Virus record (IMG/VR): IMGVR_UViG_3300043446_005562
Location: 62,001 to 126,000 of that record
Direction: 5' to 3' (one strand)
Length of the DNA stretch: 64,000 nucleotides
Below, one piece after another: positions 10,488 to 36,884 of the stretch (positions within the stretch are counted from its first letter, which is position 1; every line of letters starts with the position of its first letter). The notes below the pieces were generated by a model. It was not told where the DNA came from. It saw only the letters and a list, made by a program, of their open reading frames with translations, and did no database searches. The translations under genes were made by a program, and so were the position numbers.

Positions 10488-12815
10488 CTATACGAGGCCT
10501 AACACAGTCTTTAATTTATTGATGACTTCGGTTGCCTCAATTGATTTAGAACACTCAAACATTCGGTCTGTGCCCTTGTGTATGGGACACCAATTCCAAT
10601 CGCCTGGATCGAGTCGATGCGTGTTGAAACAGCCCGAGCACTTGTTGGAAGGTGCGCATATTCGGTGAGTGTTATGAAGAGTCTCAGTGTAGTCAAATGA
10701 AAAACCTGAAATTAGAATCAATGGAGTAGTCGTTGCCCAGGCAAGCCAGCTTAAACCGCTGCCTATTCCAACAAAGGCTTGCGACTCTTCCAATTCCCGA
10801 ATCACGGTTGAGAGCGGACCTGACTCAAGTTTTCTAATACCGGTTGGATGAGAATTGCCCATGAACCCGTCCTCCTCTCGAGAGAGTAATACCACTTCAT
10901 AGCCTCGCTCATTACACCAATCAACAACCTCTTGCCAGCCGGTTGGATTATTCCAATACTTTGCTTGGCAGGTGCCGTGAATTCCAATTGCGATTTTCTT
11001 CTTCTTTTCAACCTTTGGAATCTGAATGAGCGGTCTGGTCTCTTGATAGGCTAACCCTAAAATATCAAATGCGCATTTTTGCATAGGCTGGTCCTTGACC
11101 TCCCTGACATTTCGGGCCAGGTCAATTTCGTTCTGGTCATTGTAGTACCAGCCGATGTTGTACATCGCAACAATATTGTCCACCACCTCGCCCGGATTTA
11201 CAAATTCAATTTCCGGATACTGGTCCTTGAACATGTAATTCATGTGCGTTGAACAGACCACCTGGCAACCGTGCTTCTTTCTAAACTCTTCAACCGCTGG
11301 AAACCAGGCTAGGCTGTCTCCAAGCGAGCTTGAATCTAATGAAATGTAGACCCTGCGATCTTTGAGCACAATCGGCTCGTTAACAATCATTCTGCCGCTC
11401 TTGACGTCCGTGACTTGCACTCGCCAGTCGGTGTAAAACTTGCGGCTTGCCTTGACCCACATGTTTCTTTTGATTGTATCGCGATGAATGGTCCTACCTG
11501 AGGTTTGATCTATGAATTCAACTAGGTATTCGTCCTGAGGTCCCCCGGTTATCTCTACGTGAGGCCCGCCAACGAAATGATAGTTAATAACGAATTCTGC
11601 TTCGCGACTCTTGTTCACCTCTCTGATGTGATCTGACCGTTTAGCAATATGATTAGCGGCAAGCTCAGCAACCCTGTCCCAATTAAAATCCGAATGGATT
11701 TGAGCAGATTCCCTAACCGCCTTTTTTCGATATTCGGCTGAATTTTGATACACGTCCAGCATGACCCGGCCCAGGTCCTCAAAATCGGGCTCATAATAAT
11801 TGCCGCTTGCCCCATTGAAATGATTGTAGTCCGCGTCCCTTGCTGGTACCTGACCCAGTATTTTAACTGGATGACCCTTACCCTCAGCAAATTCAAGCTG
11901 ACCTGAGCAGTTTGAGTAGATTGCTGGCACTCCGCATGCCATTGCCTCGATTAGAGGTAGATTCCAACCCTCAGAGCGGGCACACGATAAAAAGGCACCA
12001 CATGATTTTAAAAGGTTAACATACTCTTTTCTGTCTGGAAAATGAATCACCTTGATACGGTCATCGTTGAGTCCAAAATGGGCTAGCCGTTTTTCGGTTG
12101 TCTCAAGGCCATCGCCTGAAAATGGATTATCGATTGAGACAATGAGGTCGACAGGCTCTTCTTTTTTGAATGTTTTTAAAAAGGTCTCAACAATCTCTTT
12201 GGTTGATTTTCGGTAATCCCAACGGCCGGCTAAAAAGAATTTAAAACGACCGTCCTGGGTCAATTCGTGTTTGGCTCCCGGGTCCGGATAGAACACTTGA
12301 GTGTCCACCCCCTCCGGAATAACAAAGATTTTTTCGGCTGGATAGCCTTGCGCAATGGTACAGTCGCGTTGCCATTTTGAAGGCACCCACATTTCATCAA
12401 ACTCCAGCAGTCGCTTAAAGAAATTTTCAGGCTGTTGAGTGGTCTCCCAAACGTTATAGGCTATTCGATAGTTCTGGTAATCGTGATAGAAGTAATGATG
12501 ATCGGTTTCATTTAGCACCAGGTCAATCTCGGCCTCACCCGGATTGGGCCAGGCCTCGTACATTTTAAACTCCATTAATCTCTGGTCCGGCGTCCACAGG
12601 GATTGCTCATGCAGCAAGGTCTTCATCCGGTCCGTTAGATAGGGTTCCTGATTGTGGGGCTCTTCTGACATGCCCTGCCAGGTTTTACCCACCGTAAAAT
12701 TTCTGATCTCAAGAGGCACTCTTTCGGAGAGCTTTGTAAAAAAGGATTGTGCGTGATTGTTGTAACCGGTCGAGCCTATGAATGAGGTATGAACCTTGAT
12801 TTTTGGAAGAGTCAC
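10488..12815 (-). CDS. Bifunctional glycosyltransferase: GT4 domain plus TibC/Aah-like autotransporter O-heptosyltransferase domain
   Basis: GT4: EGWNLPLIE (EX7E), GRWDYRK. C-terminal part: SSSLGDSLAWF, FVGIGSGLSWLAW and a four-Cys CSGC...WCP...FECSK motif like the Fe site of TibC. GTG start. Confidence 0.88.
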   Translation of the reverse strand: MTLPKIKVHTSFIGSTGYNNHAQSFFTKLSERVPLEIRNFTVGKTWQGMSEEPHNQEPYLTDRMKTLLHEQSLWTPDQRLMEFKMYEAWPNPGEAEIDLVLNETDHHYFYHDYQNYRIAYNVWETTQQPENFFKRLLEFDEMWVPSKWQRDCTIAQGYPAEKIFVIPEGVDTQVFYPDPGAKHELTQDGRFKFFLAGRWDYRKSTKEIVETFLKTFKKEEPVDLIVSIDNPFSGDGLETTEKRLAHFGLNDDRIKVIHFPDRKEYVNLLKSCGAFLSCARSEGWNLPLIEAMACGVPAIYSNCSGQLEFAEGKGHPVKILGQVPARDADYNHFNGASGNYYEPDFEDLGRVMLDVYQNSAEYRKKAVRESAQIHSDFNWDRVAELAANHIAKRSDHIREVNKSREAEFVINYHFVGGPHVEITGGPQDEYLVEFIDQTSGRTIHRDTIKRNMWVKASRKFYTDWRVQVTDVKSGRMIVNEPIVLKDRRVYISLDSSSLGDSLAWFPAVEEFRKKHGCQVVCSTHMNYMFKDQYPEIEFVNPGEVVDNIVAMYNIGWYYNDQNEIDLARNVREVKDQPMQKCAFDILGLAYQETRPLIQIPKVEKKKKIAIGIHGTCQAKYWNNPTGWQEVVDWCNERGYEVVLLSREEDGFMGNSHPTGIRKLESGPLSTVIRELEESQAFVGIGSGLSWLAWATTTPLILISGFSFDYTETLHNTHRICAPSNKCSGCFNTHRLDPGDWNWCPIHKGTDRMFECSKSIEATEVINKLKTVLGLV

Positions 12816-12895: not shown

Positions 12896-13657
12896 TTAAG
12901 TACTGATTATGAAGGCTGGGCATCTATAAAAATCAACACCGGCTTGGCCCTCCCAGACGTTATTTGGAGAGTTCTTTGCTGCATCAAGAAACTGGGCCTG
13001 ATGAGCTAATGATTCACCGGTATGATGATCGAGTATGTCTAAATTAACGTTGTAACCGTTGTTAAGATCCTGATTTACAATGGACCAGTAATATCTGACT
13101 CCGCCGTTTGCTCCACTGGTCGATTGGCTTGTACCATTACCACCGGCTGCAATATTGCCGTAAAAATCTACTCCGCCACCGGCTGGCCACATTTGAGATG
13201 GTGGCGGCGCAAACGTTATGCCAGGGATTTGAAAAATCCACTCACTCCAAAGACGTATGTTAACATCAATATTGGTGTTTGGATCATTGGTTACAACTTC
13301 AAGGCGCCCTCGATTGTCAAAGGGCCAGTGATCATATCCTTTAAAATCTCCCCATCGTATTTTGCCATTGCTCCACGCATAATTATAGATATTTTCGCCA
13401 GATGTGCTATTGCGATTAATATAATAAGAAGTTCCTGAATATGTTCCAGCCGTAATGTAGCCGTTCATTGAGCTATGGGGAGCAGGATTCGAAGAATCTA
13501 GATCAAATTGTGCAATATCGCCTGCCGCAAGACTGGCTGTTCCGTTTTGAGTGAATGCTCTGATCAAACTATTGGTCGAGGTTGTGCCGACTGATGTGCC
13601 GTTCCATCCAACTCTCACGCTGGAGCCGCTCTGCATTACGTATGGACTTGTTGCCAT
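12896..13657 (-). CDS. Probable fibre-associated virion protein
   Basis: 253 aa, G/N/S-rich beta-type composition; start overlaps the stop of the giant fibre gene. Confidence 0.6.
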   Translation of the reverse strand: MATSPYVMQSGSSVRVGWNGTSVGTTSTNSLIRAFTQNGTASLAAGDIAQFDLDSSNPAPHSSMNGYITAGTYSGTSYYINRNSTSGENIYNYAWSNGKIRWGDFKGYDHWPFDNRGRLEVVTNDPNTNIDVNIRLWSEWIFQIPGITFAPPPSQMWPAGGGVDFYGNIAAGGNGTSQSTSGANGGVRYYWSIVNQDLNNGYNVNLDILDHHTGESLAHQAQFLDAAKNSPNNVWEGQAGVDFYRCPAFIIST

Positions 13658-16600
13658 TAACTTAGTTTATTTTTTAAGTCCTCAATCTGGGCCTGCTGTT
13701 CCTTGATTGCCTCAATCAGGACCGAAACCAGATTTGCATAGGAAACTGCTTTGGTACCGTCCGGATTGGTGAAGACCACCTGCGGGAATGCCGCTTCCAT
13801 CTCCTGCGCAATGACTCCAGCGTAAACTCTAGTCTGGTCTTCTTGATCGTTACGTGTGAAGGTTACACCGCGCATTGCCTTTACCTTAGCCAGGGCGTCT
13901 GTGATGGTTTCAACATTATCCTTAACCGATCGATCTGAAAAGGCTATAATATTACCGGCTGCATAGATATCTCCAGTACCACCGCCGACCGTACCAACTT
14001 CAAGCGTATAACCTGGAGTTGCACCAGCATTCACGCTTAATCTCGCATTGGTTTGATCCCAATAGAGTTGATTCGTATCATCAACTGCTGCACCCGTTGC
14101 TGGGTAATAAGCAACATAGCCTGCATTACCGGAGTTTACCGTACCCGAACCTCCACCGCCGGAAATCGTAACGTCCGCCTGGCTACCCGAAGCGGCAACG
14201 GTTGCGCCCGACACAAAGTTAATAGAGGTAGCGCTTGAAACAATGGTGGTTCCAGCTTGTTTAACCGAGACAGCTGATGCGGTTCCAGAAGTTCCGCTTG
14301 AGCCAGAAGTTCCTGAAGAACCCGCTGCTCCTGTTGCGCCGCTTGTTCCTGATGATCCAGAAGTTCCTGACGAACCTGCGGGACCAGTCGCTCCAGTAGC
14401 ACCGCTTGTTCCTGAAGAACCTGAAGTTCCTGAAGAACCTGAAGTTCCTGACGAACCTGCTGCACCGGTTGCTCCGCTTGTACCTGAAGAACCTGAAGTT
14501 CCTGAAGAACCAGCTGCACCGGTTGCTCCGCTTGTGCCAGAAGAACCTGAAGTTCCGTCTTTTCCATTAAATACCCATGATACTGTGTAGTAAGAGGTTG
14601 TGTTCACTATACCAGTTCCAGCGAGTAGGGTATTTAATTGTATGTCGTAGTATGTTGTCTGATTTGTGAAAGTTCCAACTTTCCATGCTCCAATTGCTGC
14701 GTTGTTGCCAACCTCTGTTATTTGAAGATAAGAGACATTTCCTGCTGCGAGCATTGTGCCCAATGTATTAAACCAAGTTGCGTATGCTGTGCCAAATGTG
14801 TCCTGTCTTGAAATACTTAATTTAGTAGCTGTCCCAAGGTTAGTTGTGTCTAATTTGAATTGACCGAGACCTGGTGAAGAATATGCAAGCGCACTATTAT
14901 CAAACCTCCATCGACCTGAGTTTGAACCGTCATTACCTGCTGCTCCAGCCGCTCCGGTTGCTCCGCTTGTTCCACTAGAACCTGAAGTTCCCGAAGAGCC
15001 TGAAGTTCCAGAAGAACCTGCTGCTCCAGTAGCACCGCTTGTTCCGCTACTTCCACTTGTTCCAGAAGAACCGGCTGCACCGGTTGCTCCACTTGTGCCA
15101 GAAGAACCCGAAGTTCCACTAGAGCCTGATGATCCGGAAGTTCCTGAAGAACCTGCCGCACCGGTTGCTCCGCTTGTTCCTGAAGAACCGGACGTACCTG
15201 ACGAACCAGCAGGACCTGTTGCTCCGGTTGCTCCACTTGTACCAGAAGAACCAGATGTTCCGCTTGATCCAGAAGAACCAGAAGTTCCGCTAGAGCCTGA
15301 TGATCCAGAAGTTCCTGAAGAACCTGCTGCACCAGTTGCGCCGCTTGTTCCAGAACTGCCTGATGTGCCAGAAGATCCTGAACTACCTGATGTGCCTGAG
15401 CTTCCAGAAGAACCTGATGTTCCACTACTTCCACTTGTTCCAGATGAACCTGCAGGACCAGTCGCTCCAGTAGCACCACTAGTTCCTGAAGAACCTGAGC
15501 TACCTGACGTACCTGAACTACCGGACGTTCCCGAAGAACCGGCTGCTCCAGTCGCTCCACTCGTACCTGAAGAACCCGAAGTTCCTGAGCTACCGGCAGC
15601 ACCAGTTGCTCCGCTAGTTCCTGATGAACCAGATGTTCCGCTTGAACCAGACGAGCCGCTAGTTCCCGATGAACCTGAAGAGCCTGATGTTCCACTAGAG
15701 CCTGATGTACCGCTTGCTCCACTTATACCGCTAGTTCCGCTTGAACCGGATGAACCGCTTGTTCCTGAAGAACCGGCAGCACCCGTTGCTCCACTCGTAC
15801 CTGAAGAACCTGAAGTTCCTGAGCTGCCGCTTGAACCTGAAGTTCCCGAAGAACCTGAACTGCCGCTTGTTCCGCTAGAACCGCTAGTTCCCGAAGAACC
15901 TGCTGCACCAGTTGCACCGCTTGTTCCAGAAGAACCAGATGTTCCCGAAGAACCCGCTGCTCCGGTTGCTCCACTAGTTCCTGATGAACCGCTAGTTCCT
16001 GAAGATCCTGAAGAGCCGCTAGTTCCTGATGAACCGCTTGAGCCAGATGTTCCCGAGCTTCCGCTAGTTCCTGAAGAACCTGAGGAACCGCTAGTTCCGC
16101 TTGAACCTGAAGTTCCAGATGAGCCAGATGTTCCTGAGCTACCGCTTGTTCCACTTGAACCACTTGTTCCTGAAGAACCGGCTGTACCGTTTTTACCATT
16201 AAACCACCAGCTAATTACATGTTCATTACCGTTAGTTAAAGTTCCAGTGCCGGCATTCAAGTTTAAATCAACTTGTACAACGTTTCCAACTGGAGAACCA
16301 ACTGCTGTGATTGCATAAACTCCTCCAATTCCAGTAGTTAATTCAAAAATTTCTAAGTATGCTTGATTACCTGCAGTTACTTGAGTTTGAATAGCCGACC
16401 ACCATTGAGTTGAATTGAATGAACTTGGTCTGTATGCCGTTATATTTACATAAAATTTGTTAATTAAACCGACGTTCGTTGTAGCAGTTACACCCGCATA
16501 ATAGTTAATGTTTGTAGAACCTGGTGTAGTTGAAGCGCTTGAATTGAATATCCATGAAACGCCGTTTCCTATTGAACTTGCACCCGAAGTACCTGAGCTG

Positions 16601-19600
16601 CCGCTTGTTCCACTAGAACCTGAAGTACCTGAGCTACCTGAAGATCCGGATGTTCCAGATGATCCCGATGTACCTGATGAACCTGACGATCCACTTGTAC
16701 CGCTGCTTCCACTTGAACCTGATGTTCCACTTGAACCTGAACTGCCTGAAGTACCCGATGAACCGCTAGTACCGCTAGAACCGGAAGTTCCAGATGAACC
16801 TGAAGAACCTGATGTACCGCTTGATCCAGACGAGCCAGATGTTCCTGACGAACCGCTAGTACCAGAGGAACCTGAAGAACCACTAGTTCCGGATGAACCG
16901 CTTGAACCGCTTGTTCCAGACGAGCCAGAACTTCCTGAAGTACCACTTGAACCCGAGCTTCCAGATGTACCAGAAGAGCCAGATGTTCCAGAGCTACCTG
17001 AAGTTCCGCTAGATCCAGATGAACCTGAAGTACCTGAAGAACCTGAGCTACCAGAAGTTCCACTTGATCCTGATGTACCAGAAGAACCTGATGTTCCTGA
17101 GCTTCCACTAGTTCCTGATGAACCTGAAGAGCCAGATGTTCCCGAAGAACCACTACTACCACTTGTTCCACTTGAACCCGATGTTCCGCTACTACCCGAT
17201 GAGCCGCTAGTTCCTGAAGAACCGCTGCTTCCTGATGTCCCACTTGAACCACTTGTTCCAGAAGAACCCGAAGATCCTGATGTGCCAGATGAGCCTGAAG
17301 AACCTGAAGTTCCTGAGCTTCCGCTTGTTCCTGAGCTACCCGAACTACCAGAAGTTCCACTTGAACCTGAAGTACCTGAAGATCCAGAAGTTCCAGAAGA
17401 ACCGCTTGAGCCTGATGTTCCTGAGCTACCAGATGTTCCCGAAGAACCAGAAGTACCTGAAGATCCAGAAGTACCTGAGCTGCCTGAAGAACCTGAAGTT
17501 CCAGATGAACCGGACGAACCAGAGGTTCCAGAGCTTCCTGAAGTTCCTGAACTACCTGATGTTCCAGAGCTACCGGATGTACCGGAAGAGCCTGAGCTTC
17601 CGCTTGTTCCGCTTGAACCTGAACTTCCGCTAGTTCCGGATGAACCGCTTGAGCCTGAAGTACCACTACTACCTGATGAACCTGAAGAACCACTTGTTCC
17701 GCTTGAACCTGAAGAACCGCTAGTACCTGAACTTCCCGAAGTACCTGATGAGCCAGACGTTCCTGAAGAACCTGAAGAACCAGAAGTTCCGCTTGAGCCT
17801 GAGCTTCCTGATGTACCGCTACTTCCACTTGTACCACTTGAGCCAGAAGTTCCTGACGAACCGCTTGAACCAGAGGTACCGCTACTACCTGATGAACCTG
17901 ACGTTCCTGAAGAACCAGAAGAACCCGATGTTCCTGAGCTACCGCTTGTACCACTTGAACCTGATGTTCCACTGCTGCCTGATGAACCGCTAGTACCAGA
18001 AGAACCTGAAGTACCAGAAGATCCACTTGAACCAGAGGTACCAGAACTTCCTGAAGAGCCGGATGTTCCAGAGCTTCCGCTTGTACCAGATGAACCTGAA
18101 CTTCCAGAGGTTCCAGATGAACCACTAGAACCTGAAGTTCCAGAGCTTCCTGATGTACCCGATGAGCCTGAGGTTCCAGCGCTTCCGCTAGTACCAGATG
18201 AACCGCTTGATCCGGACGTACCATTTACTCCAGAAAGACCAGATGTTCCACTTGAGCCTGATGTACCTGAACTTCCTGAAGAGCCAGATGTTCCAGAGCT
18301 TCCGCTTGTACCTGAACTTCCAGATGTTCCAGATGAACCGCTTGAGCCCGAAGTCCCTGAGCTACCAGATGTTCCGCTTGAGCCTGACGAGCCGGATGTT
18401 CCGGAAGAACCTGAGCTGCCAGACGTGCCTGAAGATCCAGAAGTACCTGAGCTTCCACTTGTTCCGGATGAACCTGAAGAGCCGCTTGTTCCGGATGAAC
18501 CTGAACTACCGCTTGTTCCACTTGAACCGCTTGAACCTGATGTTCCTGAAGAACCTGAGGTGCCAGAACTTCCTGAAGTACCAGAAGAACCTGAACTACC
18601 GCTTGTTCCACTAGAACCGCTTGAACCTGATGTTCCTGAAGAACCGCTCGTTCCTGAAGAACCAGAAGAACCTGATGTTCCTGAAGAACCTGATGTACCA
18701 GATGACCCTGATGTTCCACTTGAGCCTGATGAGCCACTTGTTCCTGAACTACCCGAACTTCCACTTGTACCTGAAGAACCACTAGTTCCTGATGAACCTG
18801 AACTTCCAGATGTTCCTGACGAACCAGAAGAACCTGATGTTCCGGAACTACCACTAGTTCCTGATGAACCACTAGTTCCAGAAGAACCCGAAGATCCGCT
18901 TGTTCCGGATGAACCGCTTGAGCCGCTAGTTCCAGAGCTACCTGATGTTCCAGATGAACCTGACGTACCTGAACTACCACTAGTTCCAGAAGAACCGCTT
19001 GAACCTGATGTTCCTGAAGAACCTGAACTACCTGAAGTTCCTGAAGAACCGCTAGTTCCTGATGAACCTGAAGAGCCAGATGTTCCTGAGCTACCACTTG
19101 TTCCACTTGAACCAGATGTACCTGAACTACCTGAAGTTCCTGAAGAACCGCTGCTTCCCGATGTCCCACTTGAACCACTTGTTCCAGAAGAACCCGAGGA
19201 TCCTGATGTGCCAGATGAGCCTGAAGAACCTGAAGTTCCTGAGCTTCCACTAGTTCCGCTTGAACCTGATGTACCACTAGAGCCTGAACTGCCTGAAGTA
19301 CCTGAACTACCACTTGAGCCAGAAGTTCCTGACGAACCGCTTGAGCCTGAAGTACCACTACTACCTGATGAACCGCTAGTACCAGAGGAACCTGACGTTC
19401 CTGAAGAACCGCTTGTTCCTGATGAACCGGATGAGCCAGAAGTTCCACTTGAACCGGACGAACCAGAGGTTCCAGAGCTTCCTGAAGTTCCGCTTGAGCC
19501 AGAGCTACCGCTTGTTCCTGATGAACCTGAGCTACCGGATGTACCGGAAGAGCCTGAACTTCCGCTTGTTCCTGATGAACCCGACGTTCCTGAAGAACCA

Positions 19601-29907: not shown

Positions 29908-32088
29908 TTAATTAAATGCGACCGTTATTGTGTCAATTTTTATAGCAGAATTACAGATTTGAACCTCAACATAGATTCCGTTTGTTGCATTGAATCCGCC
30001 AAAAGTACCGTTGATTGTACCACCGCTTGATGATCCGAGTCTAATGCCTGGAGTGTCGGTACCTGAAGTGCTACCATCATTGAATGTTCCAAAATCATAT
30101 TCTGCACCATGTAATAATAAAGGTGGCGAACCTGTTCCGGAGTTTCCAACGGTTGCTCCAATCTTTCTAACAAATACTTTTAAGTATTGATTTTGCAGAT
30201 CGCTTAGTGCTGTTCCTACAAACGTTCCGGCGAATACCATTGAAAAACTTGGGATTGGGGTAGAAGATACACCTAGAGTTGTATAGAATAATCTGTAAAA
30301 GCTTGCGTTACCAGTTAACGAAGAGTAATTTGGATTTGCGCCGTTTTTATCAGGTTTAAATGAACTTAGATTTGGTTGAATCGTTGCAGTACTTGGATCG
30401 GTCAAGAAAAATCGATCCGGCCGTACTATTGTTCCGCCAACCACACAGGCTTCCCCGTTTGATAGAGTCGCGGTTGGATCCCAGGAGGTTGTGTAATCTG
30501 AGGCTTTTCTCCATTGTTCATCATTAAAAGTTTCAACGTATTGTGTGCTATTACCTGAAGTTGAGTAAGTATCAACTAGGATTGAATGATTAGTCGATGA
30601 ATTTGCTCCGCCAGTATTCCATGGATCGAATAGGGTTGCAGTCGCAGCCCCACTTGTTCCACGATATCTAAAGCTGGCAGCTGTGATTGTCCAATCCGAG
30701 ATATCATACTGAGCATTTGCATTGTTATAGTAATTGGTCCAACCGGTAAAAGAACCGGAAGATGGACTCCATGCATACTCTGAAATGGTCGGTAGACCGT
30801 AGTTTGCTGCTGTGAATTGAAAATTTTGAGAGGCTGCGCCTGAGCGGCCCTGTGTGTTTGCATTCAAGTTGTCAATATCATCAGTATGAGCATCGAACTT
30901 TGAACCAAGTATGTAATACTCTACACCACTTAGGTGCTTGGTAACAATATTAGCAGACGTACCAGACTCAGAGATTGTGGTTGATGCGGCTCCACCAAAG
31001 CTTGGAGTCGATGGATTCTTGTCTAAGAAAACATCACTTTGTGTGTATGTGAATGTTTGTGCACCGTCCGTTGTTGAATCCGTAACATTGGTAATTACAA
31101 TGTGATATCGACCCCCACTCAAACCGTTTGCGGTTAAAATAGTATCAGCATTTACTGAAACTGAAATGTTTGCTTTGTATTTTAGGCTATCTGCTCCGTA
31201 ATTTGAGATGGTGACTGTGATTCCAGCATTCGCGCCGCTTGATGAGTTTGAACCATCACCAGTTATGGCTGGAGTTGTGTAGGTTGCAAGTAGAGTTGTC
31301 CCGTCAGCGTCATAAACATCAACCGTTATTGTTGAATCCCCGCCCAATCCAGTAACAGCGTTTGCAGTTGAAAAGCTTGGAGTGGTCGATGTGGTTGCTG
31401 ACCGAGTTGAGGCAGCCCAGGTGTTGGTTTTAAAAGGTGAACCTTCTGAAGTTGGCGTACTAATTCTCACGCTGTATCGACTAAGAGATTCGCTTACATA
31501 ACCGGAAGAAGTTCCATCATTTGTGTTAAAATGGCTTGAAAAGGTTGGAGTTGGAATATACACGTTCAGAGTAGTATTGTCTCCAGGCTTTTGATCTGCA
31601 AAAACGTCTGCTCCAACAAAATTTACCTTTGAATAGGTTCCGAGCGAGGTGCCTTCATCGTAAAATTCAATTGCGCCGCCTGATACTGATACATCAACTT
31701 GACCGGAAGTTCCGCTGGTTGACACGGTTATGCCTGAGCCAAAATTAATTATCTGTGTTCCAACTAGCGCGGAAGTTCCATTTGACTGAACCTCTAGCGA
31801 AGAGCCCGCTGCTCCCGATTGAAAAACTGTCCAGTCGCTCAATTGAGTTGAGTCTGTGCCAGGCTCATTTGTTAAAGAATAATAGGTTCCGCTGGTACCG
31901 CTGATTCCAACGCCGACTATCATACCCAAACGACGTCTGTCCTTGGTGATGGCAAGCATTGCAGAAGTATCGTCAACGTTTCGTAGACCGTCCCGACCAT
32001 ACACGGCGTCGGTCACCGCATAGATATCTGTGGTGTCCGTTGGTGCAACTATACCTGTTACTGTAACTGATCCGGTTATTTGACTCAT
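29908..32088 (-). CDS. Probable virion structural / fibre protein
   Basis: 726 aa, S/T/G-rich; N-terminal AITKDRRRLGMIVGV resembles a module seen in phage tail proteins. Confidence 0.65.
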   Translation of the reverse strand: MSQITGSVTVTGIVAPTDTTDIYAVTDAVYGRDGLRNVDDTSAMLAITKDRRRLGMIVGVGISGTSGTYYSLTNEPGTDSTQLSDWTVFQSGAAGSSLEVQSNGTSALVGTQIINFGSGITVSTSGTSGQVDVSVSGGAIEFYDEGTSLGTYSKVNFVGADVFADQKPGDNTTLNVYIPTPTFSSHFNTNDGTSSGYVSESLSRYSVRISTPTSEGSPFKTNTWAASTRSATTSTTPSFSTANAVTGLGGDSTITVDVYDADGTTLLATYTTPAITGDGSNSSSGANAGITVTISNYGADSLKYKANISVSVNADTILTANGLSGGRYHIVITNVTDSTTDGAQTFTYTQSDVFLDKNPSTPSFGGAASTTISESGTSANIVTKHLSGVEYYILGSKFDAHTDDIDNLNANTQGRSGAASQNFQFTAANYGLPTISEYAWSPSSGSFTGWTNYYNNANAQYDISDWTITAASFRYRGTSGAATATLFDPWNTGGANSSTNHSILVDTYSTSGNSTQYVETFNDEQWRKASDYTTSWDPTATLSNGEACVVGGTIVRPDRFFLTDPSTATIQPNLSSFKPDKNGANPNYSSLTGNASFYRLFYTTLGVSSTPIPSFSMVFAGTFVGTALSDLQNQYLKVFVRKIGATVGNSGTGSPPLLLHGAEYDFGTFNDGSTSGTDTPGIRLGSSSGGTINGTFGGFNATNGIYVEVQICNSAIKIDTITVAFN

Positions 32089-32102: not shown

Positions 32103-33002
32103 TTATGATACAATCATTGACACTGCGCCAACGAGAGGATTTTTTGATCTAAATACATTATATGTGGTGGTCTGACCAAAATCGTTTGTGATTGATATTG
32201 GCAGATACGTAATATTTCCGCCTCCGCTTGAATAGCCGTCTCCTGAATCTGCAAGCGCAAACGGTAAGCCGTTATAATATATTGAACCCGGTACTCCATA
32301 ACTTGCTGGAATTGCAAGATACTTATAATCATTTGCACTAAATGAATATGTTCCAGCCTTGCCTCCAAGCAATTGTCCATTTGTTAGATTTTTGACGAAT
32401 GACGCGGTTGGAGTTGATGTAGAAGATGAAGTACCCCAATAAACTTTCCAAAACCAATACTTGGTTAAAGAAGAGGCATAGGTGCCGTTCAGAGTATTTG
32501 TGCCGCTGATGCTCCAAGTGTATGAACCGTAAGTGTTTAGGCTAACTGCACTGCCGTAGGTATGAGAGTTGGAACCGTCAGCTGGCTGACCGGTTAAAAG
32601 AGTACCGGTCGTATCAGTAATTACAATTGAATTTGGAGAAACGTTAGAGTCTTGAGTTGAATTCCAGCTAAAGGTTAACGAAGTAGGTAGAGCATCCCCA
32701 ACCTCCAACACGGAGGCTCCGGAAACTCCAAAGCTGCTGAACGCTGGATTTAGGTATGGGTAGAGTAAATAATCCCACATTTGCTGCATTGTTGCCCCGT
32801 TAAAGGTTTGCCCAACAGTAATACCGCCCAGGGCAGATTGAATTGGAGTTAAATTGGTATAGGTGATACTCGCTCCGCCGCCAGCAACATCATTGCTCCA
32901 GGAGAGATTGCCATTGGAATCTATTACTAGAAATCTGGTCTTGGCATTATCCTGGGTGACCCCGCTAAGATCTACCTGTTTTATTTTTAACTTATGGGAC
33001 AT
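32103..33002 (-). CDS. Probable virion structural protein
   Basis: 299 aa; S/T/G-rich with an Ig-like beta pattern; GATAAATAA motif at 33032-33040. Confidence 0.6.
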   Translation of the reverse strand: MSHKLKIKQVDLSGVTQDNAKTRFLVIDSNGNLSWSNDVAGGGASITYTNLTPIQSALGGITVGQTFNGATMQQMWDYLLYPYLNPAFSSFGVSGASVLEVGDALPTSLTFSWNSTQDSNVSPNSIVITDTTGTLLTGQPADGSNSHTYGSAVSLNTYGSYTWSISGTNTLNGTYASSLTKYWFWKVYWGTSSSTSTPTASFVKNLTNGQLLGGKAGTYSFSANDYKYLAIPASYGVPGSIYYNGLPFALADSGDGYSSGGGNITYLPISITNDFGQTTTYNVFRSKNPLVGAVSMIVS

Positions 33003-33061: not shown

Positions 33062-34018
33062 TTAATTACGTCTTTCTTTTGCGTATAAAATTGCCTCAAC
33101 GTATTTTGCAGAAGCCGTATTTGGGTCAATGCTGGAAAAGTCAGCTTCGAATGGATTTTTATTGATAAATTCACCCTTATAAAACAACTTTCCGCCATTA
33201 TTATTTGTGACCCCGGCGTTATGCATGATATTGTGTTTGTTATAGTCATTAAGGGATGAAGTTCCCCAGCTAAAATCCAGTTCAGGTTCAATTAGGGTCT
33301 GTGCACCCATTTTCCAGGCACCCCAAAGAACTGCCCACATATCTGCGCACCATTTTTGAATTGGATGATATTTTGCAAGTTCATCCGGGGGTAAAGTTTC
33401 GCGTTCATGTGCTTCTCGATCTGCCATGTATCGATAAAGGGCTAGGGAAACCTCTTTTACGTCTTGCCAATATTCGGCTGAAACCCCCTTCATTAGATAT
33501 TGAGCTCCGCCTGAATTATTTTGATTTTGTTCCACCATCTCGGGTAAAATCTTGGCAAGAGAACACATATCGACAAAAAGATCATTTGATTTTGATTTAA
33601 TGTATTCGGCTCCAATGTAAGAGACAGTATCGCTGACATACCAGTATAGGTTATCTCGCATTTCATCAAAATTCGGCAGTTGCCTAAAGATGATGTCAGA
33701 ATCATGATAGAAGATGACCTCTTTGTTGAGCTCAGGATGGGCTCTGAAATGCTGCTCAATTATGTCGGGTCTAAGAATTGGAATGTAACCGAAATTATTG
33801 GTAATGGTCTTGCGATAAGAAAAAAATCTAACGTATGGGTACTTTGCAGCAAGGGCATTAAGCTCTTGGGAAGGCGTGCCTGCATGCGCCCAAAGTACTT
33901 CAATCCAATTTGGATTTATTCCGGCTTTTATAAAATTATGAATCATTACCTCAACCTGCCAATGAAAGTATGGCACATCAGGTTGAGCTGATAAAAATAC
34001 AATCTTCTTAGATAACAT
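33062..34018 (-). CDS. GT-A fold glycosyltransferase resembling plant peptidyl-serine galactosyltransferase (SERGT1, GT96) / Hyp-arabinosyltransferase (HPAT, GT95)
   Basis: PYFHWQVEVMIHNF, GYIPILRP, FYHDSDIIF (DxD) and WCADMWAVLW motifs parallel GT95/96 conserved blocks. Confidence 0.7.
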   Translation of the reverse strand: MLSKKIVFLSAQPDVPYFHWQVEVMIHNFIKAGINPNWIEVLWAHAGTPSQELNALAAKYPYVRFFSYRKTITNNFGYIPILRPDIIEQHFRAHPELNKEVIFYHDSDIIFRQLPNFDEMRDNLYWYVSDTVSYIGAEYIKSKSNDLFVDMCSLAKILPEMVEQNQNNSGGAQYLMKGVSAEYWQDVKEVSLALYRYMADREAHERETLPPDELAKYHPIQKWCADMWAVLWGAWKMGAQTLIEPELDFSWGTSSLNDYNKHNIMHNAGVTNNNGGKLFYKGEFINKNPFEADFSSIDPNTASAKYVEAILYAKERRN

Positions 34019-34049: not shown

Positions 34050-36884
34050 TTATGGACATGCTTGAAAATCCATCACCGTACCGTCATCATAAATTTGGAT
34101 AACTCCGGTCGATATTCTAAACCATTGTGAATTACCTACAAAGCCAGAGGTTGGTGGATAATCGACTGTAACTGTATCACCAATTGTTGGATAGATGCCC
34201 ATTCCTGTGTGATAGAGTAGAGTATCGATTGTAAAGCTGCATGCTGGGTTAGGAACCGGGCTTCCAGCACTAGAAATCATGAAGGAGCCGGCTGCTAGCG
34301 TTGTAGTAGTCGTTGTTGCAGCCGCCGTTGTAGTAGTCGTTGTCGGAGCCGCAGTTGTTGTAGTCGTTGTCGGAGCCGCAGTTGTTGTAGTCGTAGTTGG
34401 AGCAGCTGTTGTGGTTGTTGTAGTTAAGCACGGACCGGCACTCATACAATCACCAAAAATTGCACCGCTTATTGTTGCAGCCGGCGTAGTTGGGAAAGTT
34501 GTTGCGAAATTAGTATAAACATATCCGTCATCTCCTAACGCATAATCACTAGGAGTTAGCCACATTAAGCTGCTAACAATTACCCCAATTCCAGTTTGAG
34601 TACATGTTCCGCATTCTAATTGATCAGCCGTGTAAATGTATATTACTGCGCCAGTCGTAGTTGTTGTAGTTGGAGCCTCAGTCGTAGTTGTTGTAGTTGG
34701 AGCCTCAGTCGTAGTTGTTGTAGTTGGAGCCGCAGTTGTTGTAGTTGTTGCTGGTGCATTGGTTGTTGTAGTGGTAGTTCCGCTACATGGAATTGATACG
34801 CCAGTTGCAGCATCATAGCATTGTTCACAAGCACCTTTGGAAATATTGATTATACTGGTTGTAAAGTCGCCTATTGTAAAACCTATTGGCGAGTGAGCTA
34901 ACACTACTCCAAGAGTTGATGAATTTCCATCATTAACTGATAATGAGAAACCTTCATTGTTTATGATATTAATGTTGGAACCGTCGGACGATACTAGTAC
35001 ATCATACACTGGACAAGTTGTGGTTGTCGTTGTCGGAGCCCCAGTTGTTGTAGTTGTAGTTGGAGCCTCAGTTGTTGTAGTTGTAGTTGGAGCCTCAGTT
35101 GTTGTAGTCGTAGTTGGAGCCTCAGTTGTTGTAGTCGTTGTCGGAGCCGCAGTTGTAGTCGTAGTTGGAGCAGCGGTAGTTGTAGTCGTAGTTGGAGCTG
35201 CCGTTGTAGTAGTTGTGGTAGGAGCAGCAGTCGTCGTTGTAGTCGTAGGCGCGGCTGTTGTGGTTGTCGTAGCAGCAGTTGTGGTTGTTGTGGTTTCACC
35301 TTGAATAGGCACAGTCACAGTATATTCGCAAACTCCTTTGGAGAATGTGTAAACCCCTACCACATTTGGAATTCCTGCAAAAATTGGATTTGCAACATTG
35401 AAGGTCCAAGGTAGAGTTACGTATTCACCAATTATACCGGTTAAATCGTGAGAATCATTACTTTGATCAACGAACGTAATTGTGTATGGCCCGCTTGGGG
35501 TTCCGCTGAATGTTATGCTAGTCGGCAAAGCTCCATCTCCTGGAGAATAGGCTAGTCCATTTGGCGCGCACGTTGTTGTAGTAGTTACGCCTGAGGTTGT
35601 AGTTGTTGTGGTTGCCGCTGTCGTTGTAGTTGTTGTTCCAACCAATTCCGGTATCAAATAGAATGGGCTAAACGAAGTAACTTGCGCATAAATTGATCTG
35701 GTTGCATAGTTTGGAACGTATACATCACCGGCGATATCCCCAGCCTCGATGGTCTCATCCGTTAAGACTCCGCTAACTTCATGAAATATTCTGACTAGAT
35801 CAAATTCTGCTTCGCTGATGCTTTGCGGTAGGGTAAATTTAACTATTGTACCGTTGGGCATGACAGAATTCCAATCGGTTATGCTAAATGCATAAATTGA
35901 ATTTTGTAGATAGAATCCAGCAGGCAATGAATCTCCGTTAGTATTATCGATTGGATTTGGCATTTTACAGATTGTAACTGGGCTTGCCTCAGTTGGGGTA
36001 CCGATTAGCTGAATGCCAAAATTAAAATTAGTTGAGCTTCCGCTTACAATATGGGTATTACATGAATATCCGGCTTGCGAGCAGTATGGATCCTCTGTGA
36101 AGTAGTGTAGTAGTAGTTTATCGCCCGTATCTAAATTAAAACCAGCAACACTAGGATTCCAATAGAGTTGACAAGTCGAATCCGCTTCATTAAAGGTTAC
36201 GGCGGTTGTGCCGCCATCACTGCTTAAATAGGCGGGCGCAGTAATATCCCCATCGCCAACTGGAATTAATTGACCGTTCACAAATAGCATGAACGCAGTT
36301 GAAGCCAACGGAGCTGGCACCAAAAATATTCCATTTTCGGATGCATTTGTGTTGTTTGTGGAAACCGCATCGGCTGTTGCCTGCATCACAACTTCTTGCA
36401 TGCACTTTGCGCCAGAGCCTCCGCCCGACAACAGGGTCCAGCCAGTTGATGTCAACCAGACGTAGACACCCTCAACGTAATTTCCTTGAGCCGCAATATA
36501 GACAATTTCACCAGGAACTCCAGTCGTTGGTAATTCGCCAAACACCCTGAGTCTTAATCTCAATATCTCAGCAACATCCTCTGCAATAAAATTCTTTGCA
36601 GTAACAGTTCCGCTTGGGGACAAGTTGATTACGGTTGGATAGACTGAATTGACCAGCTGTGTTCCGTATACTGAGAGACCTTGTCTTACTTTTACCAGAT
36701 CAGCAGATACTGTATTAATATCAACAGTAACCGCTGAGGTTCCCTGATTATAATTTATTGATGATAGAAATTCTTTGATAGCAGAGGTAATTTCTCCAAA
36801 GTTAAAATTGGAGAGCTCAACAACGGATGTTGTGCTGGAATTTGATAGTTTTTTGACCGCTGTTAATTTTACCTGTACTGACAT
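34050..36884 (-). CDS. Mucin-like Thr-rich virion protein
   Basis: 944 aa; four poly-Thr tracts (TTTTTAAP / TTTTTTEAP) separated by small Cys-containing domains. Confidence 0.75.
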   Translation of the reverse strand: MSVQVKLTAVKKLSNSSTTSVVELSNFNFGEITSAIKEFLSSINYNQGTSAVTVDINTVSADLVKVRQGLSVYGTQLVNSVYPTVINLSPSGTVTAKNFIAEDVAEILRLRLRVFGELPTTGVPGEIVYIAAQGNYVEGVYVWLTSTGWTLLSGGGSGAKCMQEVVMQATADAVSTNNTNASENGIFLVPAPLASTAFMLFVNGQLIPVGDGDITAPAYLSSDGGTTAVTFNEADSTCQLYWNPSVAGFNLDTGDKLLLHYFTEDPYCSQAGYSCNTHIVSGSSTNFNFGIQLIGTPTEASPVTICKMPNPIDNTNGDSLPAGFYLQNSIYAFSITDWNSVMPNGTIVKFTLPQSISEAEFDLVRIFHEVSGVLTDETIEAGDIAGDVYVPNYATRSIYAQVTSFSPFYLIPELVGTTTTTTAATTTTTTSGVTTTTTCAPNGLAYSPGDGALPTSITFSGTPSGPYTITFVDQSNDSHDLTGIIGEYVTLPWTFNVANPIFAGIPNVVGVYTFSKGVCEYTVTVPIQGETTTTTTAATTTTTAAPTTTTTTAAPTTTTTTAAPTTTTTTAAPTTTTTAAPTTTTTTEAPTTTTTTEAPTTTTTTEAPTTTTTTGAPTTTTTTCPVYDVLVSSDGSNINIINNEGFSLSVNDGNSSTLGVVLAHSPIGFTIGDFTTSIINISKGACEQCYDAATGVSIPCSGTTTTTTNAPATTTTTAAPTTTTTTEAPTTTTTTEAPTTTTTTGAVIYIYTADQLECGTCTQTGIGVIVSSLMWLTPSDYALGDDGYVYTNFATTFPTTPAATISGAIFGDCMSAGPCLTTTTTTAAPTTTTTTAAPTTTTTTAAPTTTTTTAAATTTTTTLAAGSFMISSAGSPVPNPACSFTIDTLLYHTGMGIYPTIGDTVTVDYPPTSGFVGNSQWFRISTGVIQIYDDGTVMDFQACP
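34300..35640 (-). repeat. Four Thr-rich tracts (T5-6-A/E-A-P units, 24-27 nt)
   Basis: About 34300-34425, 34655-34775, 35020-35295 and 35575-35640. Confidence 0.85.

What the first reader, a model, noticed from the sequence alone, without database searches (positions are those of the whole stretch)
10488..36884. Candidate phage-encoded protein O-glycosylation system that glycosylates its own giant Ser/Thr-rich collagen-like and mucin-like fibres
Seen: two glycosyltransferase genes flank a ~20 kb block (10488-12815 on one side, 33062-34018 on the other). The block encodes two giant fibres with about 1300 Gly-X-Y triplets, where Y is nearly always Ser. A poly-Thr mucin-like protein lies directly next to the second GT. 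Known: TibC/Aah enzymes are cytoplasmic protein O-heptosyltransferases that hyperglycosylate serines of autotransporter adhesins. Plant SERGT1 and HPAT glycosylate peptide Ser and Hyp. Glycosylated Thr at Y stabilises the Hyp-poor Riftia cuticle collagen helix. The host Bacteroidota O-glycosylation motif D-(S/T)-hydrophobic is absent from the repeats, and that system acts outside the cytoplasm. Inference: both GTs resemble protein-directed families, not LPS or DNA GTs, so the phage may build a glycan-coated, hairy virion. The glycans could stabilise proline-free triple helices, shield against proteases or mediate adhesion. Similar SGTSG-repeat proteins may already exist in metagenomes. The coupling to these enzyme families is the novel claim.
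Basis: partly seen in the sequence, partly recalled or inferred. Interest (0 to 1): 0.92.

Follow-up and report, generated by a model that had tools for sequence, protein, structure and literature searches.

The report
Phage fibre genes paired with glycosyltransferases
A giant bacterial virus carries two very long collagen-like fibre genes and a threonine-rich protein gene, each beside its own sugar-adding enzyme gene; the same enzyme-target pairings recur in many unrelated viruses, which suggests (untested at the bench) that such viruses often sugar-coat their own particles.

Summary
F1 (13657-22089) and F2 (22122-29666) encode 1301 Gly-X-Y triplets, with Y = Ser in 95%. g944 is 23% Thr. Both flanking genes are glycosyltransferases.

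GT1 is a GT4 domain fused to a genuine TibC/AAH-type (BAHT) domain: PDB 4rap E = 8e-57, and NCBIfam TIGR04414 at 260 bits against a cut-off of 200. The catalytic Asp, Thr/Lys/Trp and all four iron-finger Cys are conserved. The adenine-contacting Arg286 is replaced, so ADP-heptose is doubtful as donor.

GT2 is a GT-A fold enzyme with a DxD motif, from an uncharacterised family (phrog_4417). No link to GT95/GT96 was found.

- In 35 of 52 distinct phage BAHT lineages a G-[ST]-[ST] collagen-like gene lies in the locus, at a median gap of 1.4 kb and in three gene orders. One example is a Microcystis phage.
- Some Gammaproteobacteria pair a stand-alone BAHT with (GSS)n lipoproteins.
- GT2 homologues sit directly after poly-Thr virion proteins (capsid, tail tube) in cultured Lactococcus, Enterococcus, Staphylococcus, Clostridium and Chryseobacterium phages.

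The region therefore holds two separate enzyme-substrate pairs. The reverse does not hold: most (GTS-GSS)n fibre genes have no BAHT nearby. Nothing is shown biochemically. I rate it a new variant of a known kind, interest 0.78.

The parts
10488..12815 (-). GT1, 775 aa: two-domain glycosyltransferase (GT4 + BAHT)
   Evidence: Pfam Glycos_transf_1 (E = 5e-14) and Glyco_transf_9. PHROG 2170. An identical 775-aa protein is in the metagenome database.
11637..12770 (-). GT1 N-terminal GT4 (GT-B) domain, residues 16-393: candidate second-sugar transferase
   Evidence: PHROG 2170 matches residues 16-393 (E = 5e-35). Pfam PF00534, PF13439 and PF20706. The same fusion recurs in relatives.
10503..11606 (-). 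GT1 C-terminal BAHT domain, residues 404-771: TibC/AAH-type protein serine O-glycosyltransferase
   Evidence: NCBIfam TIGR04414 at 260.5 bits, cut-off 200. PDB 4rap TibC E = 8e-57. Conserved: Asp500, Thr615, Lys619, Trp690 and Cys726/729/743/755. TibC Arg286 is Val671 here and Pro300 is Gly685.
12896..13657 (-). g253, 253 aa, G/S/N-rich, unknown; lies between F1 and GT1
   Evidence: No family hit. Its start overlaps the F1 stop at 13657.
13657..22089 (-). F1, 2810 aa collagen-like fibre: 747 G-[ST]-S triplets, two internal globular domains, C-terminal chaperone domain
13774..13938 (-). Peptidase_S74 intramolecular chaperone / trimerisation domain of F1 (residues about 2718-2772)
   Evidence: Pfam PF13884 E = 3.5e-14. 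The S-D-R-S-V-K motif is visible.
22122..29666 (-). F2, 2514 aa collagen-like fibre: 554 G-[ST]-S triplets. Its N-terminal 209 aa are 83-86% conserved in relatives; the C-terminal 322 aa are non-repeat
29908..32088 (-). g726, 726 aa, T/S/G-rich structural-module protein (phrog_31482)
32103..33002 (-). g299, 299 aa. Its homologues in relatives carry G-X-Y repeats, so it is likely a short fibre or fibre-anchor module
33062..34018 (-). GT2, 318 aa: GT-A fold, DxD glycosyltransferase of uncharacterised family phrog_4417
   Evidence: PHROG 4417 E = 6e-66. AlphaFold model pLDDT 94. Foldseek hits to GT8/GT24-like GT-A enzymes. Invariant H105-D106-S107-D108. More than 3000 homologues.
34050..36884 (-). 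g944, 944 aa: conserved N-terminal 410 aa, then Cys-containing domains joined by poly-Thr mucin-like linkers. Candidate substrate of GT2
   Evidence: Synteny neck gene, g449, g944, GT2 holds in relatives.

Best explanation
The region is part of the late structural module of a 252-kb myovirus-like jumbo phage. It holds two separate candidate enzyme-substrate pairs that glycosylate virion proteins in the host cytoplasm before assembly.

Pair 1.
- Shown: F2, F1, g253 and GT1 are tightly packed on one strand.
- Shown: GT1's C-terminal domain is a true TibC/AAH-family enzyme with the catalytic base, the phosphate- and sugar-binding residues and the iron finger intact.
- Inferred: this domain transfers a first sugar from a nucleotide sugar onto Ser hydroxyls of the G-[S/T]-S triplets. 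TibC modifies Ser, not Thr, in sites of the type N-S-G-G and T-S-A-A, which resembles the Y-position Ser followed by Gly here.
- Inferred: the fused GT4 domain adds a second sugar. Relatives add methyltransferase domains.
- Uncertain: the donor. The adenine-reading Arg of TibC is replaced throughout this clade.
- Shown for the domain, inferred for the helix: F1 trimerises through its C-terminal S74 chaperone domain, and the repeats fold into a Pro-free collagen-like helix. At 0.286 nm per residue this would be about 640 nm for F1 and 475 nm for F2, carrying up to about 1200 modifiable Y-Ser per F1+F2 chain pair.

Pair 2.
- Inferred: GT2, a GT-A fold DxD enzyme, glycosylates the poly-Thr linkers of g944, the gene directly upstream. 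Its homologues would do the same for poly-Thr tails of capsid, tail-tube and decoration proteins in many other phages.

Likely roles of the glycan coat, all inferred: stiffening or stabilising the repeats, protection from proteases, and adhesion or masking.
For: GT1 identity:
- PDB TibC E = 8e-57 over TibC residues 37-386.
- NCBIfam equivalog TIGR04414 above its cut-off, whereas the LPS heptosyltransferase I model scores only 27 bits.
- Asp110, Thr226, Lys230, Trp305 and four Cys are invariant in 53 phage sequences. Their roles are taken from PMC4358343.

Linkage of BAHT to G-[ST]-[ST] repeats:
- 42 of 81 loci have at least 20 Gly-X-Y triplets.
- On the BAHT tree one large clade (38-100% identity) carries nearly all of them.
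- 35 of 52 unique lineages have such an ORF: median gap 1.36 kb, 27 within 2 kb, 9 within 500 bp, in three different gene arrangements.
- The cyanophage Mel-JY01 has the fusion enzyme 1.7 kb from an 805-aa (GTS/GSS)n ORF.
- Control loci have none: GT2 loci of other phage subfamilies and the 34% identity BAHT clade.
- Independent cellular case: stand-alone BAHT genes in Arenicellales and other Gammaproteobacteria are flanked by lipoproteins made of (GTS/GSS)n.

GT2:
- GT-A fold with a DxD motif.
- The ORF directly upstream is Thr-rich in 52 of 78 loci, against 29 of 688 background ORFs.
- In cultured phages the gene follows a capsid, major tail or decoration protein that ends in poly-Thr.

F1 has a trimerisation domain. 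The repeats are under protein-level selection.
Against: - No glycan, activity or virion protein has been observed. Everything rests on homology and gene neighbourhood.
- The reverse association is weak. Only 6 of 120 (GTS-GSS)n stretches from viral contigs contain a BAHT, and only 3 of 26 with at least 8 kb of non-repeat flank. These fibres usually exist without this enzyme.
- TibC R286A loses activity, and this clade lacks that Arg. Donor and even activity are therefore unproven.
- No heptose or other sugar-nucleotide genes are in the window. Only 64 kb of the 252-kb genome is visible.
- Glycosyltransferases are common in phage tail-fibre variable regions and are usually read as LPS modifiers (PMC7029224), so some adjacency could be regional.
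- GT2 belongs to no characterised family.
- A few GT2 loci have no Thr-rich partner (L117, L118, EfKM29).
Confidence: 0.62

Rival explanations
1. The glycosyltransferases modify the host envelope (LPS core or O-antigen, capsule, teichoic acids). This would block superinfection or tune adsorption. Their position beside fibre genes would then only reflect the variable host-recognition island.
For: This is the usual reading of glycosyltransferases in phage tail-fibre regions (PMC7029224; PMC10202952). GT1's BAHT domain also gives a weak GT9 / LPS heptosyltransferase hit. Most G-[ST]-S fibre genes lack a BAHT neighbour.
Against: GT1 matches the protein-directed TibC/AAH model at 260 bits, against 27 bits for LPS heptosyltransferase I. 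It also keeps the BAHT-specific iron finger. The specific pairing with G-[ST]-[ST] repeats persists across 38-100% identity and three gene orders, and recurs with (GSS)n lipoproteins in bacteria. GT2 sits inside head and tail assembly operons directly after poly-Thr capsid or tail proteins in siphophages. That is an odd place for an envelope-modifying gene.
Confidence: 0.13
2. The enzymes glycosylate virion or other phage proteins, but not the repeats themselves. Targets could be the globular fibre domains, g253, the sheath or baseplate proteins. The G-[ST]-S and poly-Thr tracts would be plain flexible or triple-helical spacers.
For: BAHT clades at 34-40% identity lie next to an enlarged tail sheath or an IPT/TIG-repeat protein with no Gly-X-Y repeats. 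The family can therefore serve other structural targets. The natural TibC substrate is a beta-helix, not a collagen-like helix.
Against: Within the large clade the one constant neighbour feature is the G-[ST]-[ST] repeat, while the non-repeat domains of the fibres vary. The bacterial lipoprotein partners consist of little else than the repeat. For GT2 the only shared feature of otherwise unrelated upstream proteins (capsid, tail tube, Ig-like) is the poly-Thr tract.
Confidence: 0.15
3. One or both enzymes are inactive or have another chemistry, for example DNA or small-molecule glycosylation. The virion fibres would then be unglycosylated.
For: The ADP-reading Arg286 is lost in the GT1 clade, and R286A cripples TibC. 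GT2 has no characterised relatives.
Against: All other catalytic and structural residues of BAHT are invariant across divergent sequences, which indicates purifying selection on an active enzyme. GT2 is 60-82% identical across more than 3000 homologues, with an invariant DxD. Neither resembles known DNA glycosyltransferases in the fold or sequence searches.
Confidence: 0.07

Closest known systems
TibC / AAH bacterial autotransporter heptosyltransferases (BAHT; NCBIfam TIGR04414; PDB 4rap, 4rb4) acting on TibA / AIDA-I
   Same: There is clear homology over nearly the whole enzyme. The catalytic Asp, Thr/Lys/Trp ligand contacts and the four iron-finger Cys are the same. Both are cytoplasmic enzymes that hyper-glycosylate Ser in a repetitive protein encoded next door, before that protein is exported or assembled.
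   Different: Here the domain is fused to a GT4 domain. The neighbouring substrate candidate is a phage collagen-like G-[S/T]-S fibre, not an autotransporter beta-helix. Arg286 (adenine contact) and Pro300 (heptose stereoselectivity) are replaced, so the donor may not be ADP-heptose. Dodecamer formation is untested.
Actinobacteriophage virion glycosylation (Freeman et al. 2023, Cell Host Microbe 31:1216; cited in PMC13313380 and PMC12582341; details from my own knowledge)
   Same: Phage-encoded glycosyltransferases O-glycosylate the phage's own capsid and tail-tube subunits.
   Different: The enzyme families, hosts and acceptors differ. Here the acceptors are giant collagen-like repeats and poly-Thr tracts, and the enzyme gene sits immediately beside the acceptor gene. 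Nothing is shown experimentally here.
BclA collagen-like exosporium glycoprotein of the Bacillus cereus group (PMC3104494, PMC6222408)
   Same: It is a trimeric collagen-like filament with hydroxy-amino-acid-rich Gly-X-Y repeats that carry O-linked oligosaccharides and form a hair-like nap.
   Different: BclA repeats are mostly GPT, so Pro is present. BclA is about 100 times shorter. It belongs to a spore, not a virion. Its glycosylation enzymes are unrelated to BAHT.
Giant-virus collagen-like fibril proteins and autonomous glycosylation (review PMC4691112)
   Same: A virus encodes both collagen-like surface fibres and its own glycosylation enzymes.
   Different: Those are eukaryotic giant viruses that use hydroxylysine-linked chemistry and different enzymes.
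Phage and prophage collagen-like tail fibres with a Peptidase_S74 chaperone (for example E. coli prophage collagens, PMC3368898)
   Same: Gly-X-Y segments occur in trimeric fibres that end in an S74 intramolecular chaperone.
   Different: Those have tens of triplets with Pro and charged residues, and no dedicated glycosyltransferase is known. Here there are 573 uninterrupted triplets made almost only of Ser and Thr.

Membership tests
BAHT (TibC/AAH protein O-heptosyltransferases) | Sequence match above the curated family threshold | tested here: met
   TIGR04414 scores 260.5 bits against a cut-off of 200, over residues 404-771. PDB 4rap E = 8e-57.
BAHT (TibC/AAH protein O-heptosyltransferases) | Catalytic base Asp110 and ligand residues Thr226, Lys230, Trp305 | tested here: met
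   These are Asp500, Thr615, Lys619 and Trp690, invariant in all 53 phage sequences. Roles are from PMC4358343.
BAHT (TibC/AAH protein O-heptosyltransferases) | Iron-finger motif of four Cys (339, 342, 358, 370) | tested here: met
   These are Cys726, 729, 743 and 755, invariant.
BAHT (TibC/AAH protein O-heptosyltransferases) | Arg286 contacting adenine N1 (ADP specificity; highly conserved in BAHTs, and R286A loses activity) | tested here: not met
   It is Val671 here, and I/V/A/T/L in all 39 sequences of the fibre-linked clade. Arg is kept in 13 of 14 of the other phage clade and in 60 of 80 genome-contig loci, including all clearly bacterial ones at 30-36% identity.
BAHT (TibC/AAH protein O-heptosyltransferases) | N-terminal beta-barrel, beta-hairpin thumb and dodecameric ring | tested here: inconclusive
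   The alignment starts at TibC residue 37. Thumb-tip Phe265 is kept and Val266 is Met. Pfam TibC_1st gives only sub-threshold hits in relatives. The oligomeric state cannot be tested here.
BAHT (TibC/AAH protein O-heptosyltransferases) | ADP-heptose as donor; O-linkage to Ser | not testable with these tools
   This needs enzyme assays. No heptose pathway genes are in the window.
BAHT (TibC/AAH protein O-heptosyltransferases) | Acceptor is an adjacent autotransporter adhesin | tested here: not met
   No autotransporter domain is found in any large ORF of the window. The neighbours are collagen-like fibres.
Collagen-like triple-helix proteins (Pfam PF01391) | Uninterrupted Gly-X-Y periodicity and a Pfam Collagen match | tested here: met
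   Runs reach 573 triplets. PF01391 E = 4.6e-42.
Collagen-like triple-helix proteins (Pfam PF01391) | Helix-stabilising Pro/Hyp or charged residues at X/Y | tested here: not met
   Pro occurs at X in 4 of 1301 triplets and charged residues are almost absent.
Collagen-like triple-helix proteins (Pfam PF01391) | Adjacent trimerisation domain | tested here: met
   F1 has a C-terminal Peptidase_S74 domain, E = 3.5e-14. None was detected for F2.
Collagen-like triple-helix proteins (Pfam PF01391) | Actual triple-helix formation | not testable with these tools
   This needs CD melting or electron microscopy.
GT-A fold, DxD-dependent glycosyltransferases | GT-A Rossmann-like fold | tested here: met
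   The model has pLDDT 94. Foldseek finds WbbM, the UGGT catalytic domain, XXYLT1, LgtC and glycogenin at E = 1e-6 to 1e-4, TM 0.4-0.5.
GT-A fold, DxD-dependent glycosyltransferases | DxD motif after a central beta-strand | tested here: met
   H105-D106-S107-D108 is invariant in 30 sequences and follows strand 101-104.
   No GT family of any kind appears in Pfam even at E up to 10 for 30 family members. There is no PDB sequence hit. I know of no solved GT95/96 structure and none appeared among the fold hits. I did not check whether Pfam holds models for these two families, so the Pfam miss alone does not exclude them.
Phage virion self-glycosylation systems | Phage-encoded GT genes within structural modules, beside virion proteins with Ser/Thr-rich acceptor tracts | tested here: met
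Phage virion self-glycosylation systems | Glycans present on virion proteins | not testable with these tools
   This needs glycoproteomics.

The most novel reading that the evidence does not exclude
Two sequence-coded virion glycosylation modules are widespread in phages and have gone unrecognised.
1. A BAHT clade has been retargeted from autotransporters to G-[S/T]-S collagen-like repeats. It has an altered nucleotide pocket and hence a non-ADP-heptose donor. Its dense Ser-linked glycans are what allow Pro-free, charge-free triple helices half a micron long to fold and persist, giving a new class of glyco-collagen.
2. A new GT-A family (phrog_4417) writes mucin-type glycans on poly-Thr tails of capsid, tail-tube and fibre proteins, from dairy and clinical Firmicutes phages to jumbo phages.
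Probability: 0.25. Interest if true: 0.9.

Novelty: new variant of a known kind. Interest (0 to 1): 0.78.

Why it matters
Phage virion glycosylation has so far been demonstrated mainly in actinobacteriophages. If these two gene pairs work as inferred, three things follow.

1. Self-glycosylation would be common across phages of Firmicutes, Bacteroidota, Cyanobacteria and uncultured jumbo phages. Each enzyme family has more than 3000 protein clusters in metagenomes.
2. A virulence-associated enzyme family (BAHT) would have a second, environmental role on collagen-like repeats, in both phages and bacteria.
3. An unannotated family (phrog_4417) would gain a function that can be tested at once in cultured dairy, staphylococcal, enterococcal and Chryseobacterium phages.

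Glycan coats affect immune recognition, stability and adsorption of therapeutic and industrial phages. Pro-free glycosylated triple helices would also interest collagen biophysics and biomaterials.

Tried and rejected
- Megablast of 11 kb of the window against cultured phages found nothing.
- Pfam, NCBIfam and PDB sequence searches of GT2, g944, g726, g299, g253 and g203 found nothing. Pfam at E up to 10 on 30 GT2 family members gave only noise, so the GT95/96 proposal could not be supported.
- The AlphaFold model of the g944 N-terminal 415 aa was poor (pLDDT 61.6, residues 1-160 unreliable). Its fold search was uninformative (weak ZU5-like beta-sandwich), so the virion location of g944 stays unknown.
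- Promoter and terminator scans around GT1 gave no more sites than shuffles, so they give no evidence for or against co-transcription.
- There are no tRNAs in the window. There are no sugar-nucleotide biosynthesis genes in the window, and the other 188 kb of the contig could not be read.
- Host assignment failed. The nearest terminases are uncultured huge phages, Sphingomonas phage PAU and Prevotella Lak phages at 31-38%. The nearest GT2 in an isolate is a Chryseobacterium phage at 40%. These are hints of Bacteroidota only.
- Literature searches found no paper linking BAHT enzymes to phages or to collagen-like repeats, nor poly-Thr virion tails to a glycosyltransferase. Freeman 2023 is not held in the library.
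- I rejected recent DNA amplification as the cause of the repeat regularity.
- I rejected the plus-strand ORFs inside the repeats as genes: they are antisense artefacts, and the same error is present in the Mel-JY01 annotation.
Full report
**1. What is in the window**

The window is bases 62001-126000 of IMG/VR contig IMGVR_UViG_3300043446_005562, which is 252,618 bp long. It is a large myovirus-type phage. Identified genes include:
- large terminase, 3184-5130;
- baseplate wedge, 6114-7802;
- gp15-like tail-sheath stabiliser, 8335-9087;
- neck / head-closure protein, 38284-40407;
- PhoH;
- two sigma-like factors.

No cultured phage is close at the DNA level. The nearest terminases are uncultured huge phages, Sphingomonas phage PAU and Lak phages, at 31-38% identity. 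The host is not established.

The finding covers a co-oriented minus-strand block with short gaps. In transcription order it reads: neck gene, g449, g944, GT2, g299, g726, F2, F1, g253, GT1, g203.

**2.

- F1 (2810 aa) has 747 Gly-X-Y triplets, including one uninterrupted run of 573.
- F2 (2514 aa) has 554 triplets. The total is 1301.
- Y is Ser in 95% of triplets. X is Ser or Thr. Pro is nearly absent.
- A repeat piece matches Pfam Collagen at E = 4.6e-42.
- The DNA repeat units match only 65-86%.
- Ser at Y uses both the TCN and the AGY codon families. These cannot interconvert by one synonymous change, so the pattern is held by selection on the protein and not by recent amplification.
- F1 ends in a Peptidase_S74 intramolecular chaperone domain (E = 3.5e-14). 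This is a known trimerisation module of phage fibres.
- At the collagen rise of 0.286 nm per residue, the repeats would span about 640 nm (F1) and 475 nm (F2). This is an inference.
- g944 is 23% Thr, with T5-6 blocks in AAP/EAP-spaced linkers between Cys-containing domains.

**3. GT1 is a real TibC/AAH-family enzyme, with one telling difference**

- Residues 16-393 form a GT4 domain.
- Residues 404-771 match the NCBIfam equivalog model for autotransporter O-heptosyltransferases at 260.5 bits, against a cut-off of 200. LPS heptosyltransferase I scores only 27 bits.
- The same residues match the TibC crystal structure sequence at E = 8e-57.

I mapped the functional residues described for TibC (PMC4358343) onto 53 phage sequences:
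- The catalytic Asp110 is invariant.
- Thr226 and Lys230, which bind the beta-phosphate, are invariant.
- Trp305, which binds the sugar, is invariant.
- All four iron-finger Cys are invariant.
- Arg286 hydrogen-bonds adenine N1 and explains ADP specificity, and its Ala mutant loses activity. It is Val in GT1 and I/V/A/T/L in all 39 sequences of GT1's clade.
- Pro300, the heptose stereoselectivity determinant, is Gly or Ser in that clade.
- A second phage clade and the true bacterial BAHTs keep Arg.

The fold and chemistry are therefore BAHT, but the ADP-heptose donor is not secured. No sugar-nucleotide genes are in the window.

**4. The co-occurrence test for GT1**

A scan of viral contigs with the BAHT domain returned 80 loci at 34-100% identity.
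- 42 of 81 loci, including the cyanophage locus, have at least 20 Gly-X-Y triplets.
- On a maximum-likelihood tree of 52 unique sequences, one large clade (38-100% identity) holds nearly all of them. Most exceptions there have cut flanks or shorter repeat runs.
- 35 of 52 lineages have a G-[ST]-[ST] ORF in the locus. The median gap is 1.36 kb, 27 lie within 2 kb and 9 within 500 bp. Three gene orders occur: upstream on the same strand, downstream on the same strand, and convergent.
- The cultured Microcystis phage Mel-JY01 has a 1227-aa GT4-methyltransferase-BAHT protein 1.7 kb from an 805-aa (GTS/GSS)n ORF. The GenBank record annotated that ORF on the wrong strand.
- Loci used as controls have none. 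These are 45 GT2 loci from other phage subfamilies and 29 loci of the 34% identity BAHT clade.

An independent case turned up in bacterial genomes. In Arenicellales and other Gammaproteobacteria, a stand-alone BAHT that retains Arg286 is flanked by two or three small lipoproteins. Each consists of a signal peptide with a lipobox Cys, (GTS/GSS)n repeats and an acidic tail. TibC modifies Ser but not Thr, at sites such as N-S-G-G and T-S-A-A. This is compatible with a Y-position Ser followed by Gly.

**5. Limits of that association**

Only 6 of these contain a BAHT, and only 3 of the 26 with at least 8 kb of non-repeat flank.
- Such fibres are therefore common and mostly lack this enzyme nearby. 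This argues against glycosylation by BAHT being required for these helices in general.
- Other BAHT clades sit beside an enlarged tail sheath (1309 aa) or an IPT/TIG-repeat protein instead.
- The family is abundant: more than 3000 clusters, mostly 690-790 aa GT4-BAHT fusions. JGI auto-annotates them as autotransporter O-heptosyltransferase.
- I found no paper that connects the family to phages or to collagen-like repeats.

**6. GT2 is a glycosyltransferase of an uncharacterised family, paired with poly-Thr proteins**

Identity:
- GT2 has no Pfam, NCBIfam or PDB sequence hit. It belongs to phrog_4417, "unknown function".
- It has more than 3000 homologues at 60-82% identity.
- Its AlphaFold model (pLDDT 94) is a GT-A fold. 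It is nearest to retaining GT8/GT24-like enzymes: WbbM, the UGGT catalytic domain, XXYLT1, LgtC and glycogenin.
- It carries an invariant D-S-D motif.
- The proposed likeness to GT95/GT96 could not be supported.

Context across viral contigs:
- In 80 viral loci, close relatives keep the order neck gene, g449, g944, GT2, g299.
- Across the whole 43-100% identity range, the ORF directly upstream is Thr-rich in 52 of 78 loci. Among other ORFs the figure is 29 of 688.
- In most of the remaining loci an S/T-rich giant ORF lies one gene further upstream.

Context in cultured phages (30-40% identity to GT2), where the gene follows a virion protein that ends in poly-Thr:
- the capsid protein of Lactococcus phage CHPC836;
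- in Lactobacillus phage iLp84, a small poly-Thr protein directly upstream, with the major head protein one gene further upstream also ending in poly-Thr;
- the major tail protein of Enterococcus phiFL2A, Clostridium phiCTP1, Staphylococcus SA2 and Arcanobacterium TPWB06;
- small Ig-like or decoration proteins of Lactobacillus phages SAC12B, Semele and LP65;
- two poly-Thr proteins of Chryseobacterium phage MA9V-3.

One of the eight phages sampled in the last batch (EfKM29) lacks such a partner. The only feature these upstream proteins share is the poly-Thr tract. I found no literature on this pairing.

**7. Synthesis**

GT1 (BAHT + GT4) goes with the collagen-like fibres. GT2 goes with the poly-Thr protein g944. 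Both families also occur together in a more distant phage (L036), in a cluster with a GT6 enzyme and an IPT/TIG-repeat protein.

What is shown:
- the enzyme identities and their conserved catalytic residues;
- the repeat architecture and its protein-level selection;
- the trimerisation domain of F1;
- the conserved neighbourhoods.

What is inferred:
- that the repeats are the acceptors;
- the order of sugar addition;
- that the repeats form a triple helix;
- any stabilising or shielding role of the glycans.

What is unknown: the donor sugars, the host, and where the fibres and g944 sit on the virion. The fold search on g944 was uninformative.

**8. Comparison and verdict**

The closest known systems are:
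- TibC/AAH with TibA/AIDA-I, which share the enzyme family and the adjacent repetitive Ser-rich substrate;
- virion glycosylation in actinobacteriophages;
- the glycosylated collagen-like BclA nap of Bacillus spores;
- giant-virus collagen-like fibrils.

The present case differs in three ways: the acceptor type for BAHT, the altered nucleotide pocket, and the new GT-A family.

I rate it a new variant of a known kind. Confidence that at least the stated mechanism is broadly right is 0.62, and interest is 0.78. The hypothesis is directly testable in laboratory E. coli and in several cultured phages.

Noticed in passing
L308 (Arenicellales chromosome OZ244198) 8426-12511; also L303, L305, L306, L309, L310, L314: A stand-alone BAHT gene (373-389 aa, Arg286 kept) is flanked by 2-3 small lipoprotein genes. 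Each has a signal peptide, a lipobox Cys, (GTS/GSS)n repeats and a poly-Asp/Glu tail. This is a cellular counterpart of the phage BAHT-repeat pairing.
   Followed up: partly
L001 (Microcystis phage Mel-JY01, PP395634) 635-3052 (+) versus annotated CDS 739-2298 (-): The GenBank record annotates the antisense, P/E/V-rich frame of its collagen-like gene. The real ORF is the 805-aa (GTS/GSS)n protein on the plus strand. The same antisense artefact ORFs occur in the window (for example 16508-21787 +).
   Followed up: yes
L283 4339-5904 (phiFL2A); L285 4111-4924 (Staphylococcus phage SA2); L370 2158-2920 (Arcanobacterium phage TPWB06): In phiFL2A the GT2 homologue is broken by a frameshift, while phiFL2B gave a single-piece match; this is a natural control pair. 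In SA2 and TPWB06 a poly-Thr ORF overlaps the 3' end of the major tail protein gene in another frame. This may be a frameshift extension of the tail tube protein.
   Followed up: partly
L054 6915-15075 (and L053-L078): A BAHT clade at 34% identity keeps Arg286 and Pro300. It lies between a second GT4 gene and an enlarged tail sheath gene (1309 aa, with about 1000 extra residues before the sheath domains). This suggests sheath glycosylation in those phages.
   Followed up: partly
L036 258-15191: A 216-kb phage has a cluster of a 1630-aa tail fibre with STNSYGV-type repeats, a GT4/BAHT fusion (823 aa), an IPT/TIG-repeat protein, a GT2 homologue and a GT6 enzyme. Both enzyme families of the window are together here, without any Gly-X-Y repeat.
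   Followed up: partly
L021 859-7046; L001 4747-8430: Methyltransferase domains (FkbM, Methyltransf_23/11) are fused to or placed between the GT4 and BAHT parts in some relatives. This hints at methylated sugars.
   Followed up: no
window 1538-2164, 60546-60989, 2172-2894: There are two sigma-factor-like genes (one matches PHROG 'late sigma transcription factor') and a PhoH gene.
   Followed up: no
window 41232-60500: A run of very large minus-strand ORFs (790, 2058, 1210, 741, 394 and 1212 aa) has almost no family hits. The 790-aa protein has a short tail-fibre-like match at residues 35-76.
   Followed up: no
window 9866-10477 (g203): g203, directly downstream of GT1, is more conserved in relatives (71-89% identity) than GT1 itself and has no family hit. 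It probably belongs to the baseplate module and not to the glycosylation genes.
   Followed up: no
window 16198-16575 and 14566-14919 (F1 internal domains): Two globular inserts of about 120 aa between the collagen-like segments of F1 resemble each other. Both end in W-x-F-N-G-K-[ND]-G, leading back into the repeats. They have weak relatives in other BAHT-linked fibres.
   Followed up: no
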